A DNA stretch of 63,507 bases, filler included, from Reticulomyxa filosa (taxonomy: Eukaryota; Protista; Foraminifera), in the NCBI GenBank assembly GCA_000512085.1. It is 18 parts of 18 records of this genome, joined end to end, with 100 filler letters (N's around TTAATTAATTAA, not from the genome) between each part and the next. Parts side by side here need not be neighbours in the genome. Positions count along the whole stretch, not along the records: positions 54,128 to 60,351 come from ASPP01008827.1; 17 more parts are not named here. The stretch is one strand, 5' to 3'. A model generated the notes under the pieces. That model was given only the letters and a program-made list of their open reading frames with translations. It did not search any database and was not told the DNA's origin. Shown piece by piece: positions 54,128 through 60,351 of the stretch. The position numbers and the translations under genes are program-made. Position 1 is the stretch's first letter. Every line of letters starts with the position of its first letter.

Positions 54128-57100
54128 TTTACATGAGACGACAAAAAAAAAAAAAACAAAGTCCATGTGGCCCTGTTTTTCACCTAGCATATCCTCTTGA
54201 AACAGGGTATGAAGCATCTCTTGCAAAATATACTCCTTTACCGTATAACGAAGTTGAATTGTAGTCACGTAAAAATCCCTATCACGTTCACATATATGTT
54301 CAGCGCAGTGATGCAAACAAACAAAAAAATCTTAGTTTCACAAAACTTTGTTACAAATCTCTGGGATGCTCTTGCTGTGTGAACCTTTACAAATTAAAAA
54401 CAAAAAAAGTTTGTAAAAATAAAAAATATTGAGATTTTCATTTTTAAAAGTATTAATAAATTTTAAAAAATAAAAAAAATCAACCGTGCCACATCCATCG
54501 AATGTTCTTTGTTGCAGGAGTAATTCTTTTGGTTGTCAACCAAGTATTCTCCAAATTTTGATGCTGGTACCATGTGTGCAAGTTTTGCACAACGAATACT
54601 TTGAGAACTTGGTAATCGGCTCGGCTTGTAGTAGAATAAAATTCTTTAACTGCTTGTTTTGCCAAATCGTGATTTTCAATGTCCACTGGCACGTTGTAGC
54701 CATCGCTCCCGCTGAGACTTGTGTAAGTTGGAATCCACCAGCTGGGAAGTTCGTCTTGTTCCTTGGAGTCATTGGCGTCCTCGTAGTTTTCCATTGCCCA
54801 CCATTTTTGTTCCTCATCTTTGTTGTTCTGAACAAAGACGGAGGGAGCCTAGTTTGAGTTGTGGTTTGTTCACAAGAGTGGCAGGAGGGGGGCACACATG
54901 ATAATGTGTTTAAAAAAAAAATGATAATTTGAACATCAAAGTTACAAAACTGGCTCATCATCATAAGTATCCATATTATTTTGATTGGATAGATCATCAG
55001 AATAGACCTGGTTTTGTCTCGCATTAGGCATGCTGACGAAGAAAATGTCGTACGCGGTGGTGTCTTGGCTTTCGACGCAATACCACTCCCCCATTTTGCT
55101 CTTCCGCACCCGGTCTCGAATTTGGTGCAGTATTTGATTCAACGAGCAATTTTTCTTGTACGCTTCAGATACCACGTCTTTCATGGATTGGCTGAGCAGT
55201 GAAGAGTCACTGACCACATGTCCTTTGGTGGTCGACCAGATCGTTAAAAGCCATCATCATTGTGTCCGTAATATTGTTGTTGTGTGACATGTTCTTCTTT
55301 TCCTCGAAAGATTACTTGATGAGCCTTGGGTGTGTTTCGACCACGACACGCGTCGACAATAAATATCTTTGGAAATTCTTGGAAGGATTTCATTCGATGG
55401 CAATTGAAAGCATTTCGGATTTCGTCGATCGACACCGATTTGCCTTCGCTTGTGACTAATACGTTTCCGTCGTCTCCATGTCCGCAAATGACCATGATTA
55501 ACCCGTCATAGTTGTTTGCGTTTTTGCGTAGTTTGTGACTAATGATTGTCCCTTCCACAAAGTCTTTGACATCTTCTTGTGTCATTTTTTCTGAGTCGTT
55601 GCACACAAATGTAAACTTGAGTTCTTTTTCGAACAAATCTTTAAAGTTTTTTATGTCCTTGTCTTTCACGTTCTTCAAGCTAGGCCATCCACCACTTTCA
55701 CTGTATTCACTGATCCCGACCATTATCACCAATGCCTTTTTCATTAGTTTCTGTGTTCCCGTTGTACTGGCCGCTTGGGCCGCTGCGTTCCAAACAACTT
55801 TAAACGATAGCTCCTCTTTTTCAAATGCTCTCAGCAAATCTTCATCCGAACCGATTACTTGGTCGCTCATATCCACAATTTTCAATTTTAAATTCATTAG
55901 ATGGATGTTTTCATAGTCCACATCTTCTAAATTGTGATAACTTTGCCGGAGCAATTCCTTAAACGTTAATTCTTTCAATTTTGTCGATTTTTGCTTGTTG
56001 TTAATTGTTAATTGCACTGTTACCTTTTATTTATTTATTTTTTTTGCAAAAACAAAAAAAAATGAAATTGATGTCGTTTAAAAAATCTTTAAAAATACAT
56101 CTATTGCAAATAGAATATCTCAACTTGGTCGTCATCGTCTTTATTGTCCTCTACATGCTATTTAAACAACAAAATCAAATTTTGCATTGAAAATAAAAAA
56201 CAAAGTGAAAATGTATTTATTTGTATTTTCTCGAGACATACCTCCTCCGGGGGACGGTAAATGATATAACTTTGAATAGCGACACAAATAGTATTGATAT
56301 TTACATCTTTTAAATCATTTTTCCATTTACTTTTGGTCAGCAACCACGTCCGAAAATCTTCACGTGGTAACTGTTCAAACTTTCCAATCATTTCTTGTTT
56401 ATCATTTTCATTTCTTTCTTTCCACCATACCATCCACTTCTTCCTCTCTTCCTTTCTCAATTTTTTTGTTTCCCCCACCCAATACAATCAGTTTTCTTTT
56501 TGTTGTCTTCCAACGCAAGGTCCCACACAAAAAAACTCACATAGGCTTCTTCGTTCAGTTCTAACTCTTCATCATTATTTTTTTCATTTTTTTGTTCTTG
56601 TTCATTCGATTGCTCCGATTGGTTTGACCCTAAGTCACTTTGTGTATCCTCCCATTCAAAATCTTCACGCATATAATCTTGTTGTAAACTTTGTTCCGGT
56701 TCTTGTCCTTGTTTTTGTTCTTGTCGCTGTTCTTGTTCTCGTTGCTGGTCTTGTTCTTTTCTTTTCTGCTCTTCCTCAGCAGTCATTTTCAGGATAGCCA
56801 ATATGTCATCATCATCACCGTAGTCTTGACTTGAGGAAAAAGGTAAATCGTTATGTTCATCGAAACTTCCACTACGCGTGACTTCGTTGCTGTGAAGAGT
56901 AGGCTGAGCGTGATTGAGTACAACAGAAAACGAGTTCAAAGCTCGAAGTAACGAAGCATCCACAAGAGGTCTGGGAATAGTGCTCGAGTGTTCGATTTCA
57001 GTATCCTGCATATCTTCATCCTCCACCCACACCCCGACCGCGGTCCTCAAGTGTGTATATATAGACTCCTCTCCATCGTACCCTCCGAGGACATGCACGT

Positions 57101-57995
57101 GCGTACGGTCTTCATTTAATATTGCCATGCAGCCGCTCAAAGCAATGGGTAGAGTGTACTTGGCTTTCGTCCATTCCCCTTTGGATATGGAGTATACATG
57201 CACTGCGTCGGTTGGTGCGGACAATGCATCCCATCCACCAAAAAACAAGATGGCATCGTTGATACGTACACATCCATATCCGTTGAAGGGTTGAATTGTC
57301 GAACAAACTTGTAACTTTTGAAATGTAAACTCGTTGTTTGTTTCATCGTACTCAATTGATAATCCTGTTTTTCTGCAAAATAATGTCATTTCTGTTTTCT
57401 TGTTTTTTGCCAATCTGTTGTCCGTATTCAGCACAAAACAGTGATAACATATACTGTTATCGTCTGTCGGTAAGGTACCATGTTTGACGTATTGAAATTT
57501 GTTTAAGTCAAATACATCTATATTCTTTGGGGAGTAAGTGATGAACAACAAATGATTGTTGCTTCCACCAAGCACTGCACGCACTCCATTATAATCATCT
57601 GGTTTTCTTCCTAGAACTACTGACCGTCTAAATTTTCCTGTAAAAGGGAGCCACTGACCGAAATCTTTTGCTGATTTCGATCCTCGAGATTGCTGATCGG
57701 AATACCTCATCACCAATGCATGTTTGTATACTCCGCCAAATGACAACAAGGTGGTTTCATTTGGGTCGTTGTTTTTCATCAACTTAATCACATAGTGTCC
57801 AGCCAATAAAATATCCTTTGGAAAAGGGTATATGGATTTGTACTCATTCGTAATTTCATCATAGGAGTAGCAATTGTTGCTTTGAAAACTTCCACAGATT
57901 AAGATTTCGTGTTTGTGAAACACACATTGACTTTGTAAAAGTGGAACTGGCAAAGGAGCCAGCCTTTGAAATGGATCTTGAGTGTCCATATTCAA
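54128..57995 (-). CDS. Multidomain Kelch - helical - PB1-like - caspase (peptidase C14) - PARP/ART fusion protein, 3' truncated at contig end
   Basis: Exons 57995-56541, ~56451-56242, ~56157-56125, 56023-54951 (1-nt loss in the T-run at 55246-55249), 54848-54485, 54384-54347 and 54278-54184, all with GT-AG introns that preserve frame. Motifs: Kelch (LFFGGW, VLGGYDG), ICGHG, IVDACRG, WMWHGS and LYGKGVYFARDASY. Confidence 0.8.
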
Positions 57996-58664
57996 GATTT
58001 TTTCTTACAAAGTTGCTTACTTTGCTCGTTTCGCGTTCGAGAATGTGGAGTAGATTTTGAATCACAGGGGCGAAAAAAATCAGAGTTAGCAAAACTCTTT
58101 TTGTCAGAATTTCTTTAGCTGTATAGAAAAACACTTAAGTAACAGCGTATTCATTGACCTTCTGTGCTAAAGTTTCCTTTTTCAAACAGTACAAACTGAA
58201 CATAAAATTGCTGTAATAAATTATATTTTGTGGATGGCAGTTGATCTTTGTCTTTTCAAGTTACATTTAAAAAAATATATTCGGAGCGGCATAAAATTCA
58301 ACGGCCCAAGTAATACTTAAAAACCTAACAATTTTTCTTCGAAAAAGAGTGTTACAAATGCCAATAATAAGCTTTGTGATAATACCAAAAAAATAGTACT
58401 AAATGTATGTTTTGCGTTGAGAAAGTCTAGTATCTTCACAACAAACATTTTTTTTGCAGTATTGTACCAAACGAAAATTAACAGATTTTTGTTGTGAATT
58501 TCTAGCCCATCTTGAATGAACATTGATCCAAAGATTAATATGCTGAGAAAAATTCATTTCATTTGATTTACTTCAAAATAATCAAGTTAATTAAAATTTT
58601 TTTAAACTTACAACAAAAAACCTCAAAAAGCTTACTTATTTCTTGTAAAAAAAAGATAAAGATT

Positions 58665-60351
58665 TTACACAGATTTTCGCTGTTGGAAAACGATATAATA
58701 ATCAATTGCGTTTTTACTTTCCACACAGTGCCATTCATTTTTATTGCAAATTTCCGTCATAATATCTTGCAACATTTGGTTGAATGAATAACCACTCTTA
58801 TATGTTGACGTGACAATATTTTTCATGCATTGACTCAACAATGACAGTTTGCCTACTGTATTTCCTTTGGTAGTTGACCAAATAACTAAAAAACCGTCAT
58901 AATTGCGTAATCCTCTTATTCCTCGGATTGCAGATTTCTGAGGCTCTGCAATCTTAGTGTGACAAACATCAATGATAAATATCTTAGGGAAATCTTCAAA
59001 TGATTGCATTCGCTCGCAATCAAAGGAATCTTGAAATTTAGCAATGGGTATATACTTTCCGTCACTTGTTACCAACACATCTCCTTCGTCTCCTCGACCT
59101 CCATATCCACAAAAAATCATAATCAACCCATCATATTTGTTTGTATTATTGCGAAGTCCGTGATCGATGATTACTTGATTCATAAAATTTTGAATATTTT
59201 CCTTTGTCATTTTCGGTGACGAATTACATACAAATGTATAATTCAATTCTTGTTCAAATAATTGTTTAAAATTTTCAGTGTCATCTTCTTTCACACCTGA
59301 AAGATTAGGCCATCTTTCATTGTCAATATATTCACTAATTCCAATCATTATTACCAATACATTTTTTATCTTTTTTTTCTTTCCAATTATTATTGAGGGC
59401 TGAAATGGAACCAAGTTTATTTCAAATAAGGGTCCACCACTTTCAAATTCTCTTTTTACATCTTCATCAAATTCAATAATATCATTTTTCATGTTAACCA
59501 ATTCAAGTCTTAAATTTTCAGTTCTCATTTTTTGGAGATGTTTCTCTTCCAAACAATTATGACTTTGACGAAGAAGTTCTCCAAATGTCAATTCTTTCAT
59601 TTTTATCAAGTTCTTTCTTTCACCCATTATTACACACGCTGTCAACTATTTATGTGTTATTATTATTATAATCCGATCAAAAAATAATAGCAATCAAAGA
59701 GTGTATAATTAACTTCTTCTTTGTTGTCCTCATTGTTCTATTTGTTAAATAACACAATATATCATTATCAATTAAATGTAAAAAAAAAAATGAAAAAAAC
59801 AACATAACAGAGTCAAGATAAGCATCAACAGAAAGGCGAATAGAATCTATATCATCTCCTGTGATTTCATTTTTCCATTTACTGTCATTCAATAACCACA
59901 TTCCAAATTGTTCGGTTGGTATTGTTTGAAATTTTGAAATAATCTCTGTTTTTTCTTTTTCTTCTCTTTGGCCCCACCATCTCCTCCACATTTTATATTT
60001 TCCCTTTTTTTTTGTTTGTTTGTATGTAGGCTATAACATATATACAATACAATAGAAAAAAAAACACAAACTCCCAACATTGATGTTTTTCATTTTTGTA
60101 AACACTTGATTTTCACTTTTCTTGATATTCTATTAATAAAGTAAAAATTTATTACATTTTCGCAATTCACATATTTTTATTGAAAAAAAAACATAAGTCG
60201 CATTTTTTTTTTGAGCATATACAAAGCAATTATCCTTAAATATAGGGACAACAGAAAAGTAACACTGAACATTGCCATATTGTTGCTCATTTTCCTCTTT
60301 TTTTGCTATTTTGTCCATTTTGTCATCGTTTTCTTCTTTTTCTTCTTTTTC
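58665..60351 (-). CDS. Tandem paralog: helical - PB1-like - caspase-like domain with catalytic His replaced by Tyr; no PARP; 5' truncated
   Basis: The WWGQREEKEKTEIISKF exon and the KELTFGELLRQS...VIMIGISEY...DGLIMIFCGYGG...PKIFIIDVCH...GFLVIWSTTKG exon align with the neighbouring gene. Confidence 0.85.

What the first reader, a model, noticed from the sequence alone, without database searches (positions are those of the whole stretch)
54128..57995. Single-gene Kelch-PB1-like-caspase-PARP fusion: candidate protist immune / cell-death effector
Seen in sequence: five separate ORF calls and unlisted small exons join into one frame through GT-AG introns. The key caspase-to-PARP junction is a phase-0, 102-bp intron (54849-54950: ...DDEP|gttttg...ctag|APSVFVQNNKDEEQKWWAMENY...). 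The protease has an intact dyad (ICGHG, His at 55478-55480; IVDACRG, Cys at 55346-55348). The C-terminal part reads LPSWW...VFVVQN...RWMWHGS..SIPEICNKGFLRDYNSTSLYGKGVYFARDASY. Established knowledge: this is the H-Y signature of PARP7/12/14-type ADP-ribosyltransferases; in animals caspases cleave PARP1, and these PARPs act in antiviral defence. Inference: a Kelch sensor, an oligomerisation module, a protease and an NAD+-consuming ART in one chain suggest a switch in which ligand-induced caspase self-cleavage releases or regulates the PARP. I do not recognise this architecture from any described system.
Basis: partly seen in the sequence, partly recalled or inferred. Interest (0 to 1): 0.9.

Follow-up and report, generated by a model that had tools for sequence, protein, structure and literature searches.

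The report
Foraminiferan Kelch–caspase gene with PARP tail
On a short contig of the foraminifer Reticulomyxa filosa, a Kelch–caspase-like gene from a large species-specific family is followed, across a plausible in-frame intron, by the first half of a PARP10/14-type ADP-ribosyltransferase domain; this pairing was not found elsewhere, but no RNA evidence shows that it is made as one protein.

Summary
The piece is the whole of Reticulomyxa filosa contig ASPP01008827.1 (6,224 bp).
- a Kelch exon;
- a 4-helix module and an 11-codon mini-exon;
- a PB1-like beta-grasp;
- a caspase-like C14 domain with its His and Cys intact;
- a -1 frameshift in the T4 run at 55246-55249;
- a GT-AG intron after 54951;
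- three exons that read as about the N-terminal 55-60% of a PARP10/12/14/15-type catalytic domain, cut by the contig end.

GenBank already splits the locus at the frameshift into RFI_12165 (Kelch to p20) and RFI_12164. RFI_12164 splices the p10 exon to the first PARP exon.

The Kelch/helical/PB1-like/caspase part belongs to a large R. filosa paralogue family. The PARP tail is unique to this locus: it is absent from 150 caspase relatives, 120 Kelch relatives and six paralogue loci.

One-gene status rests only on splice signals, a 25-residue C-terminal extension and an ab initio model. No RNA run was listed. Four of about ten paralogue loci carry single -1 frameshifts and none has a nonsense codon, which favours assembly error over decay.

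The S1 pocket is not caspase-like (DxCRG, no SWR loop), so Asp-directed self-cleavage is doubtful. The immune-switch reading remains inference. Interest is moderate.

The parts
56541..57989 (-). Exon 1: ATG 57989, Kelch beta-propeller (about residues 1-340), then an acidic/Gln-rich low-complexity linker; donor GTGAGT.
   Evidence: Pfam Kelch_1 27.4 bits (cut-off 20.1) and Kelch_3 27.4 (cut-off 22). At least 229 R. filosa 'Kelch motif family' relatives at E 1e-80 to 1e-102. Paralogues start at the same MDT..PFQ.L..LP.PL..SQCV motif. Boundaries.
56242..56451 (-). Exon 2: family-specific 4-helix module (KKWMxWWKERNExDK...SKWKND); donor GTATGT.
   Evidence: Present once or twice in 25 family proteins. 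AF2 model pLDDT 86.7 with four helices. No PDB fold match, best Foldseek E 3.7.
56125..56157 (-). Exon 3: 11-codon acidic mini-exon (HVEDNKDDDDQ).
   Evidence: AG/GT boundaries. The same EDNKEE-type segment lies between the helical module and the beta-grasp in P0053, P0013, P0161 and P0099 and in the tandem paralogue. GenBank RFI_12165 instead reads through the intron here.
55742..56023 (-). First part of exon 4: PB1-like beta-grasp domain with a conserved SDED(L/V) motif.
   Evidence: Alignment A1 of 31 sequences. AF2 pLDDT 84.5, beta-beta-alpha-alpha-beta-alpha-beta. Best Foldseek matches are PB1 domains of KIAA0049, NBR1, Cdc24p and Par6, but only at E 6e-3 to 0.1, alongside ubiquitin-like folds. 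No Pfam PB1 hit.
55250..55741 (-). Exon 4, caspase-like large-subunit (p20) region; catalytic His 55478-55480, Cys 55346-55348.
   Evidence: Peptidase_C14 E 8e-16. Caspase-3 p17 E 1.3e-7, with H and C aligned. Family profile against caspase-3 E 3.8e-14.
55246..55249 (-). T4 run where the frame shifts by -1; paralogues imply T5 (GFLT). The upstream frame stops at TAA 55246-55244.
   Evidence: GenBank RFI_12165 ends here.
54951..55249 (-). Exon 4 after the frameshift: small-subunit (p10) region plus a 25-residue tail that 12 paralogues lack; donor GTTTTGT at 54950.
   Evidence: Peptidase_C14 positions 162-228, E 0.013. 57-77% identical to the paralogues' p10 regions. Alignment A3 shows the unique extension.
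54828..54950 (-). It holds the in-frame TAA at 54942-54944.
   Evidence: The donor heptamer is identical to that of the intron at 54346. No transcript evidence.
54485..54827 (-). PARP exon A: linker plus the start of the ART domain, up to WMWHG (His 54486-54488). A possible alternative start ATG lies at 54794.
   Evidence: No Pfam or PDB sequence hit on its own. ESM Atlas: 9 of 10 structure rows are PARP clusters (TM by query 0.40-0.71), and the top feature hit is PARP at 0.88.
54347..54384 (-). PARP exon B (with the carried G: GSHSKSIPEICNK), linking HG(S/T) to the GF motif.
   Evidence: Too short to search. The fit to the PARP10-type segment is by reading only.
54184..54278 (-). PARP exon C (GFLRDYNSTSLYGKGVYFARDASY...), with the triad Tyr at 54228-54230; donor GTGAAA at 54183.
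   Evidence: Pfam PARP is the only family hit, E 0.0032, 17.4 bits (cut-off 26.7). All 20 PDB hits are catalytic domains of PARP13/10/15/12/14, E 0.012-0.8.
54128..54183 (-). Start of the next intron, running to the contig end. The rest of the PARP domain, including the third triad residue, is missing.
   Evidence: contig length 6,224 equals the piece.
58665..59991 (-). Context: tandem upstream paralogue with the same helical module, mini-exon, beta-grasp and C14 domain. Catalytic His is replaced by Tyr, Cys is kept, and it stops at TAA 58665 with no PARP.

Best explanation
This is most likely one transcription unit of Reticulomyxa filosa, currently split in GenBank into RFI_12165 and RFI_12164. 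It would encode, in order: Kelch propeller, acidic linker, 4-helix module, PB1-like beta-grasp, caspase-like C14 protease (His/Cys intact), a 25-residue linker, and a PARP10/14-type mono-ADP-ribosyltransferase domain. The PARP domain is truncated by the contig end.

Shown: the domains, their order and strand, the splice-compatible frame, and the family context.

Inferred:
- The T4 frameshift is a single-base undercall of the assembly.
- The 102/123-nt intron is spliced.
- The protein works like its Kelch-caspase paralogues, as a repeat-domain protein that brings protease domains together through the adaptor modules. This copy would have gained an NAD+-using ART as an extra C-terminal effector through a locus-specific fusion.
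- A role in conflict or cell death is a plausible guess from the lineage-specific expansion and the effector types. It is not demonstrated.
For: - Organism and contig.
- Domains.
- Every proposed exon boundary is GT..AG, and the phases close.
- Intron positions, the helical module and the mini-exon are shared with the tandem paralogue and with paralogue proteins.
- Kelch-caspase fusions recur in the family (P0013, P0020, P0025, P0032, P0161, P0184, P0236).
- The caspase ORF runs 25 residues past the point where 12 paralogues stop, and ends exactly at a GTTTTGT donor identical to another donor in the same gene.
- Both candidate acceptors keep the PARP frame, and GenBank's own model RFI_12164 makes the join.
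- The stop and the first PARP ATG are only 148 nt apart.
- Frameshift as artefact: 4 of about 10 paralogue loci have exactly one frame break each, all -1. Two lie in 5-nt homopolymers, and no nonsense codon was seen.
Against: - No RNA evidence.
- An in-frame TAA lies 6 nt after the donor, and an ATG at 54794 could start a separate PARP ORF.
- No PARP was found in 150 caspase relatives, in 120 Kelch relatives or downstream of six paralogue loci. The join therefore has no comparative support.
- GenBank models of this family are demonstrably unreliable: spurious 24-37 nt introns and over-splitting.
- PARP identity rests on exon-wise, sub-threshold evidence, because the joined CDS was not searched.
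- The frameshift may be real.
Confidence: 0.5

Rival explanations
1. There are two adjacent genes. The Kelch-caspase gene ends at TAA 54942-54944, as its paralogues end soon after the p10 region. A small stand-alone PARP-domain gene starts at ATG 54794.
For: - All 12 aligned paralogues terminate right after the caspase domain, and none carries PARP.
- An in-frame stop lies just inside the putative intron, and an ATG opens the PARP exon.
- Small stand-alone PARP-domain proteins exist as ESM Atlas clusters.
- The only support for the join is an ab initio model from an annotation that is often wrong.
Against: - Only 148 nt would have to hold a 3' end and a promoter, whereas the neighbouring genes on this contig are about 675 nt apart.
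- The caspase ORF is extended by 25 residues to a good donor, and the PARP frame stays open 18 codons upstream of the ATG.
- The donor is identical to a confirmed-looking donor in the PARP part.
Confidence: 0.25
2. The locus is a decaying pseudogene. The -1 frameshift at 55246-55249 is genomic, so no Kelch-to-PARP protein is made, whatever the splice pattern.
For: - The frameshift is in the assembly, and the upstream frame hits TAA at once.
- Large, fast-expanding families carry many dead copies.
- The tandem neighbour has already lost its catalytic His.
Against: - It is the only disruption in about 3.4 kb of coding sequence.
- The catalytic residues and all splice sites are intact.
- Three other paralogue loci show the same kind of lesion, a single -1 shift with no nonsense codon. 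That pattern fits systematic base undercalls better than neutral decay.
Confidence: 0.2
3. The contig is an assembly chimera, and the PARP exons were joined to the caspase gene by misassembly in a repeat-rich genome.
For: The assembly is fragmented (contigs of 0.7-25 kb) and error-prone. The architecture is unique to this contig.
Against: - Composition is continuous across the junction.
- The junction lies in unique linker and intron sequence, not in a repeated segment.
- Splice signals and frame fit on both sides.
- No repeat was found at the junction.
Confidence: 0.05

Closest known systems
Reticulomyxa filosa Kelch-caspase paralogue family (e.g. 'caspase-8' P0161, RFI_31453 P0184, RFI_17079 P0236; caspase-like proteins discussed by Klim et al. 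2018, PMC5982838)
   Same: They share the Kelch N-terminus, acidic linker, 4-helix module, PB1-like beta-grasp and C14 domain with the DxCRG motif, at 45-60% identity.
   Different: None has a PARP tail, and all stop 6-8 residues after YDI(I/V)F. Some carry TPR, or no repeat domain, instead of Kelch.
Animal effector caspases (caspase-3, PDB 1nmq and many others)
   Same: Best solved relatives. The family profile gives E 3.8e-14 over the p20 and p10 regions, with catalytic His and Cys aligned and an ACRG motif.
   Different: The S1-pocket Gln is Asp, and the SWR loop with the S1 Arg is absent. There is no CARD or DED prodomain. Substrate specificity is unknown.
Clade-3 mono-ART PARPs (PARP10, PARP14, PARP15, PARP12, ZAP/PARP13)
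   Same: The last exon aligns to the YGKGxYFA strand of these catalytic domains, and only to these. The first exon's Atlas model matches PARP12, TiPARP and macro-PARP clusters. H and both Tyr positions are present.
   Different: No Macro, WWE or zinc-finger domains. The N-terminal partner is a caspase-like protease. The third triad residue and the C-terminal 40% of the domain are off the contig. Perina et al. 2014 (PMC4245714) list heterogeneous Rhizarian clade-3 PARPs but none with a caspase.
Metazoan lineage-specific DED/TRADD-N proteins with C-terminal Macro and PARP14-like ART effectors (Kaur et al. 2021, PMC8195603)
   Same: The theme is the same: lineage-specifically expanded multidomain proteins that combine adaptor modules, beta-propellers and a C-terminal PARP14-like ART as predicted effector.
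   Different: The adaptors differ (Death-fold and TRADD-N there; 4-helix module and beta-grasp here). Those proteins have no protease in the same chain, and they come from oysters and cnidarians, not a protist.
PB1 domains (NBR1, Cdc24p, Par6/aPKC, p62)
   Same: Beta-grasp fold, with PB1 domains as the best PDB matches. The conserved xDxxxxxIxSDED(L/V) stretch resembles the second half of the OPCA motif (motif comparison from my own knowledge).
   Different: No Pfam PB1 hit. Foldseek E is only 6e-3 to 0.1, and ubiquitin, SUMO and RBD folds score alike. No clear conserved beta-1 Lys. Self-association is untested.

Membership tests
Peptidase C14 (caspase/metacaspase, clan CD) | Pfam PF00656 match above the gathering score | tested here: met
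   58.8 bits against a cut-off of 21.4, E 8e-16. The p10 piece matches profile positions 162-228.
Peptidase C14 (caspase/metacaspase, clan CD) | Catalytic His-Cys dyad | tested here: met
   His 55478-80 and Cys 55346-48 align to caspase-3 SHG and QACRG.
Caspases proper (Asp-specific, family C14A) | S1 pocket Arg179 / Gln283 / Arg341 (caspase-1 numbering) | tested here: not met
   In the profile alignment to caspase-3, the Gln position is Asp, nearly invariant in the family. The SWR loop falls in a gap. The Arg179 position is ambiguous, Lys or Leu.
Caspases proper (Asp-specific, family C14A) | Uninterrupted p20-p10 reading frame | tested here: not met
   A -1 frameshift lies in the T4 run 55246-55249 of the assembly. 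Whether it is real could not be tested.
PARP catalytic domain (PF00644, ARTD) | Pfam match above the gathering score | tested here: not met
   Exon-wise only. The 32-residue exon scores 17.4 bits against 26.7, with E 0.0032 and PARP as the sole family. The first exon gives no hit. The joined CDS was deliberately not searched.
PARP catalytic domain (PF00644, ARTD) | H-Y-(E/I/L/...) triad | tested here: inconclusive
   H is in WMWHGS (54486-88) and Y in GVYFA (54228-30). Y is aligned to PARP10/13/15. The third residue lies beyond the contig end.
PARP catalytic domain (PF00644, ARTD) | ART fold | tested here: inconclusive
   The ESM Atlas model of RFI_12164 residues 79-193 matches PARP clusters at TM by query 0.54-0.71, but the model's pLDDT is 0.53 and only half a domain is present.
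PB1 domain (PF00564) | Pfam match; beta-grasp fold with OPCA and/or basic surface | tested here: inconclusive
   No Pfam hit at E up to 10. The AF2 beta-grasp is confident. PB1 domains are the top Foldseek matches, but all are above E 1e-3. The OPCA-like SDED motif was judged by eye only.
Kelch-repeat beta-propeller | Kelch motif matches above cut-off; multiple blades | tested here: met
   Kelch_1 27.4 bits against 20.1 and Kelch_3 27.4 against 22. It has E 1e-80 to 1e-102 to at least 229 'Kelch motif family' proteins. The number of blades was not modelled.
STAND/NLR-type immune receptors or apoptosome-like platforms | Central NACHT/NB-ARC P-loop NTPase | tested here: not met
   No NTPase domain appears in any exon. 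The gene may work like a sensor-effector protein but is not a member of this family.

The most novel reading that the evidence does not exclude
A single about 1,250-residue foraminiferan protein couples a Kelch ligand-binding propeller and PB1-like/helical assembly modules to a caspase-like protease of non-Asp specificity and a PARP10/14-type mono-ART. Assembly-driven protease activation would cut the acidic linker and release or switch on the ART as a conflict or cell-death effector. The His-less tandem paralogue would act as a cFLIP-like decoy. This would be a protist protease-ART death or immunity module with no described counterpart.
Probability: 0.12. Interest if true: 0.75.

Novelty: new variant of a known kind. 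Interest (0 to 1): 0.45.

Why it matters
If the join is real, it adds a protease-plus-ADP-ribosyltransferase architecture to the known ways of combining cell-death and conflict domains. It would do so in a rhizarian protist, where almost nothing is known about such systems. The R. filosa caspase-like proteins already matter in debates on caspase origins. This study adds three points:
- They sit in a large family with Kelch or TPR fronts and two uncharacterised adaptor modules.
- Their S1 pocket is not caspase-like.
- One copy may have captured a PARP effector.

It also shows that the public annotation of this family is unreliable, through frameshifts, over-split models and spurious introns. 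That affects studies that use these proteins as outgroups.

Tried and rejected
- RNA evidence: the look-up of sequencing runs listed no run, so read laying could not be used. The intron and the T-run remain untested.
- PARP exon A alone: no PDB hit at E up to 10, no Pfam PARP hit and no homologue of 67-338 residues other than RFI_12164 itself.
- PARP in relatives:
  - phmmer of the PARP exons against the 150 best caspase relatives gave nothing.
  - Pfam on 30 of them, including all with long C-terminal tails, found no PARP.
  - tblastn against eight paralogue loci gave nothing.
  - An Atlas search with the whole of RFI_12164 found no C14+PARP cluster.
- Metagenome scans were both blank: an exact pattern across the T-run allowing T4 or T5, and a relatives search with PARP exon A.
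- The 4-helix module was tested as a death-fold candidate and found no PDB fold match. That idea was dropped.
- Complex prediction on two copies of the beta-grasp gave no verdict (score 0.00). This is evidence neither for nor against self-association.
- The p10 piece alone against PDB gave only chance Mediator hits. It was replaced by the family-profile search.
- Rfam, tRNA and tandem-repeat scans of the piece found nothing beyond the repeat that encodes the EQ-rich linker.
- Literature searches for a described caspase-PARP fusion or foraminiferal Kelch-caspase were blank. The R. filosa genome paper is not held.
No domain-level PARP score or full-length model exists.
Full report
**Identity of the piece.** The caspase ORF matches a 952-residue database protein at 100% identity. 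This is hypothetical protein RFI_12165 of Reticulomyxa filosa, ETO24978.1. It lies on contig ASPP01008827.1 of GCA_000512085.1, whose 6,224 bp are exactly the piece 54128-60351 in reverse. GenBank has four gene models on the contig:
- a partial 187-residue model;
- a 320-residue C14 protein (the upstream paralogue);
- RFI_12165, annotated Kelch + C14, ending at window 55244;
- RFI_12164, 193 residues, window 55184-54480.

**Checking the observation.** All coding is on the minus strand. I rebuilt the exon chain by reading frames and comparing with paralogues. Every boundary is GT..AG and the phases close.

| Exon | Window coordinates | Content |
|---|---|---|
| E1 | 57989-56541 | Kelch propeller and acidic linker |
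| E2 | 56451-56242 | 4-helix module |
| E3 | 56157-56125 | mini-exon |
| E4 | 56023-54951 | beta-grasp, caspase-like domain, tail |
| E6 | 54384-54347 | PARP exon B |
| E7 | 54278-54184 | PARP exon C, followed by an intron that runs off the contig |

The frameshift is a T4 run at 55246-55249. Paralogues read GHNDDGF-LT(I/V)WSTTKGH continuously, so one T is missing relative to the family. GenBank's RFI_12164 uses the same donor with an acceptor 21 nt further on, giving 123 nt. Both acceptors keep the frame.

**The domains.**
- *Kelch.* It passes the Pfam Kelch_1 and Kelch_3 cut-offs. It has at least 229 R. filosa relatives at 45-51% identity. These are stand-alone, fused to WD40, or fused to C14. 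Paralogue N-termini show that the true start is the ATG at 57989, so GenBank's two extra upstream exons look spurious.
- *4-helix module.* E2 encodes a confident 4-helix model (pLDDT 86.7). The module occurs once or twice in 25 family proteins and has no PDB fold match.
- *PB1-like beta-grasp.* The first about 80 residues of E4 fold as a confident beta-grasp (pLDDT 84.5). Its best PDB matches are PB1 domains, but only at E 6e-3 to 0.1, with ubiquitin-like folds close behind. Pfam sees no PB1. 'PB1-like' is therefore fair as a description of the fold, not as family membership.
- *Protease.* It is a solid C14 member (58.8 bits). Its nearest solved relatives are animal caspase-3 chains. This agrees with Klim et al. 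2018, who grouped R. filosa caspase-like proteins with animal caspases (PMC5982838).
- *S1 pocket.* In the profile alignment to caspase-3, the Gln of QACRG is an almost invariant Asp (DxCRG). The SWR loop that supplies the second S1 arginine is missing. From established caspase structural knowledge, this argues against Asp specificity.

- Exon C (32 residues) hits only PARP in Pfam (E 0.0032, below the cut-off). All 20 of its PDB hits are catalytic domains of ZAP/PARP13, PARP10, 15, 12 and 14, aligned on the YGKGxYFA strand.
- Exon A has no sequence hit. However, the ESM Atlas model of RFI_12164 residues 79-193 matches PARP12, TiPARP and macro-PARP clusters in 9 of 10 structure rows (TM by query up to 0.71). 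Its best feature hit is a PARP cluster at 0.88.
- The two lines of evidence are independent and collinear. The His (WMWHGS) and both Tyr positions lie at the expected spacing.

I put the PARP identity at about 0.9. Only about 113 residues of the domain are on the contig, and the third triad residue is missing.

**Is it one gene?**

For:
- The parts lie on the same strand.
- Only 148 nt separate the TAA from the first PARP ATG, against about 675 nt between the two neighbouring genes.
- The caspase frame runs 25 residues beyond the point where 12 paralogues stop. It ends at a GTTTTGT donor identical to the donor at 54346.
- Two in-frame acceptors are available.
- GenBank's model makes the join.

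Against:
- The join has no comparative support. No PARP was found in the 150 best caspase relatives, in the 120 best Kelch relatives or downstream of six other paralogue loci.
- The GenBank models of this family are poor. They contain 24-37 nt 'introns' inside conserved coding sequence, and one gene is split between the helical module and the beta-grasp.
- No sequencing run was listed, so there is no transcript evidence.

I rate the fusion at about 0.5-0.55.

**Frameshift.** A tblastn of an intact paralogue against ten family loci shows single frame breaks in four of them (L001, L004, L007, L008). All four are -1. Two lie in 5-nt homopolymers and one in a GG pair, and none is accompanied by a nonsense codon. 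This pattern fits systematic base undercalls in the assembly better than neutral decay. It cannot be proved without reads.

**Mechanism.** The family combines repeat domains (Kelch, TPR), two small adaptor modules and a protease. Related caspases elsewhere carry SAM (the foraminifer Nonionella stella) or kinase domains. This is the layout of proximity-activated, lineage-specifically expanded proteins. PARP14-like ARTs are known as C-terminal effectors of such expansions in oysters and cnidarians (Kaur et al. 2021, PMC8195603). The most likely reading is that this copy gained an ART effector through a local fusion. Ligand sensing, oligomerisation (complex test: no verdict), linker cleavage and an immune role are all inference.

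**Verdict.** One-gene status and function remain unproven. If real, this is a new domain architecture built from known parts. Interest is moderate.

Noticed in passing
window 58665-59991 (minus strand), continuing upstream to the contig end at 60351: Tandem paralogue with the same helical module, mini-exon, beta-grasp and C14 domain. Its catalytic His is replaced by Tyr (CGYGGRG, with a 3-residue insert) and CRG by CHT, while Cys is kept. It looks like a pseudo-protease sitting next to an active copy, reminiscent of a caspase/cFLIP pair. The acidic low-complexity sequence at 60351-60270 suggests that its own N-terminal domain lies off the contig.
   Followed up: partly
window 58159-58523 (minus strand): The first two exons of GenBank model RFI_12165 (MFIQDGLEIH...) have no counterpart in about 30 paralogues. 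Those start at the MDT..PFQ.L..LP motif, so the real start is probably ATG 57989.
   Followed up: partly
L004:5870-5930, L007:1040-1090, L008:2880-2910 and window 55246-55249: Four of about ten family loci have one -1 frame break each inside the caspase domain (A5 to A4, GG to G, T5 to T4, and one unclear). None has a nonsense codon. This suggests single-base undercalls throughout assembly GCA_000512085.1.
   Followed up: partly
L004:3781-6304; L002:4951-7681: GenBank models over-split this family. In L004 the helical module ends one model and the beta-grasp plus caspase start the next. In L002 a Kelch model and a caspase model lie 147 nt apart. In L005 and L004 annotated introns of 24 and 98 nt cut conserved caspase sequence.
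   Followed up: partly
window 56242-56451; P0099, P0013 (two copies each): A conserved about 65-residue 4-helix module (KKWMKWWKERNEKDK...F..WLL..SKWKND) occurs once or twice between the repeat domain and the beta-grasp. It has no Pfam family and no PDB fold match.
   Followed up: partly
family-wide (alignment A3); window 55340-55360: The active-site motif is DxCRG instead of QACRG, and the SWR loop is absent. These 'caspases', used as outgroups in metazoan caspase phylogenies (PMC10959488, PMC11251625), may not be Asp-specific.
   Followed up: partly
P0010, P0079, P0091, P0092, P0100: Related caspase domains carry other partners: TPR (R. filosa), SAM (the foraminifer Nonionella stella), protein kinase with or without RGS (unnamed metagenomic eukaryotes), and CH + MORN.
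   Followed up: no
window 56691-56767: An imperfect 6/18-nt tandem repeat encodes the Glu/Gln-rich low-complexity linker after the Kelch domain.
   Followed up: no
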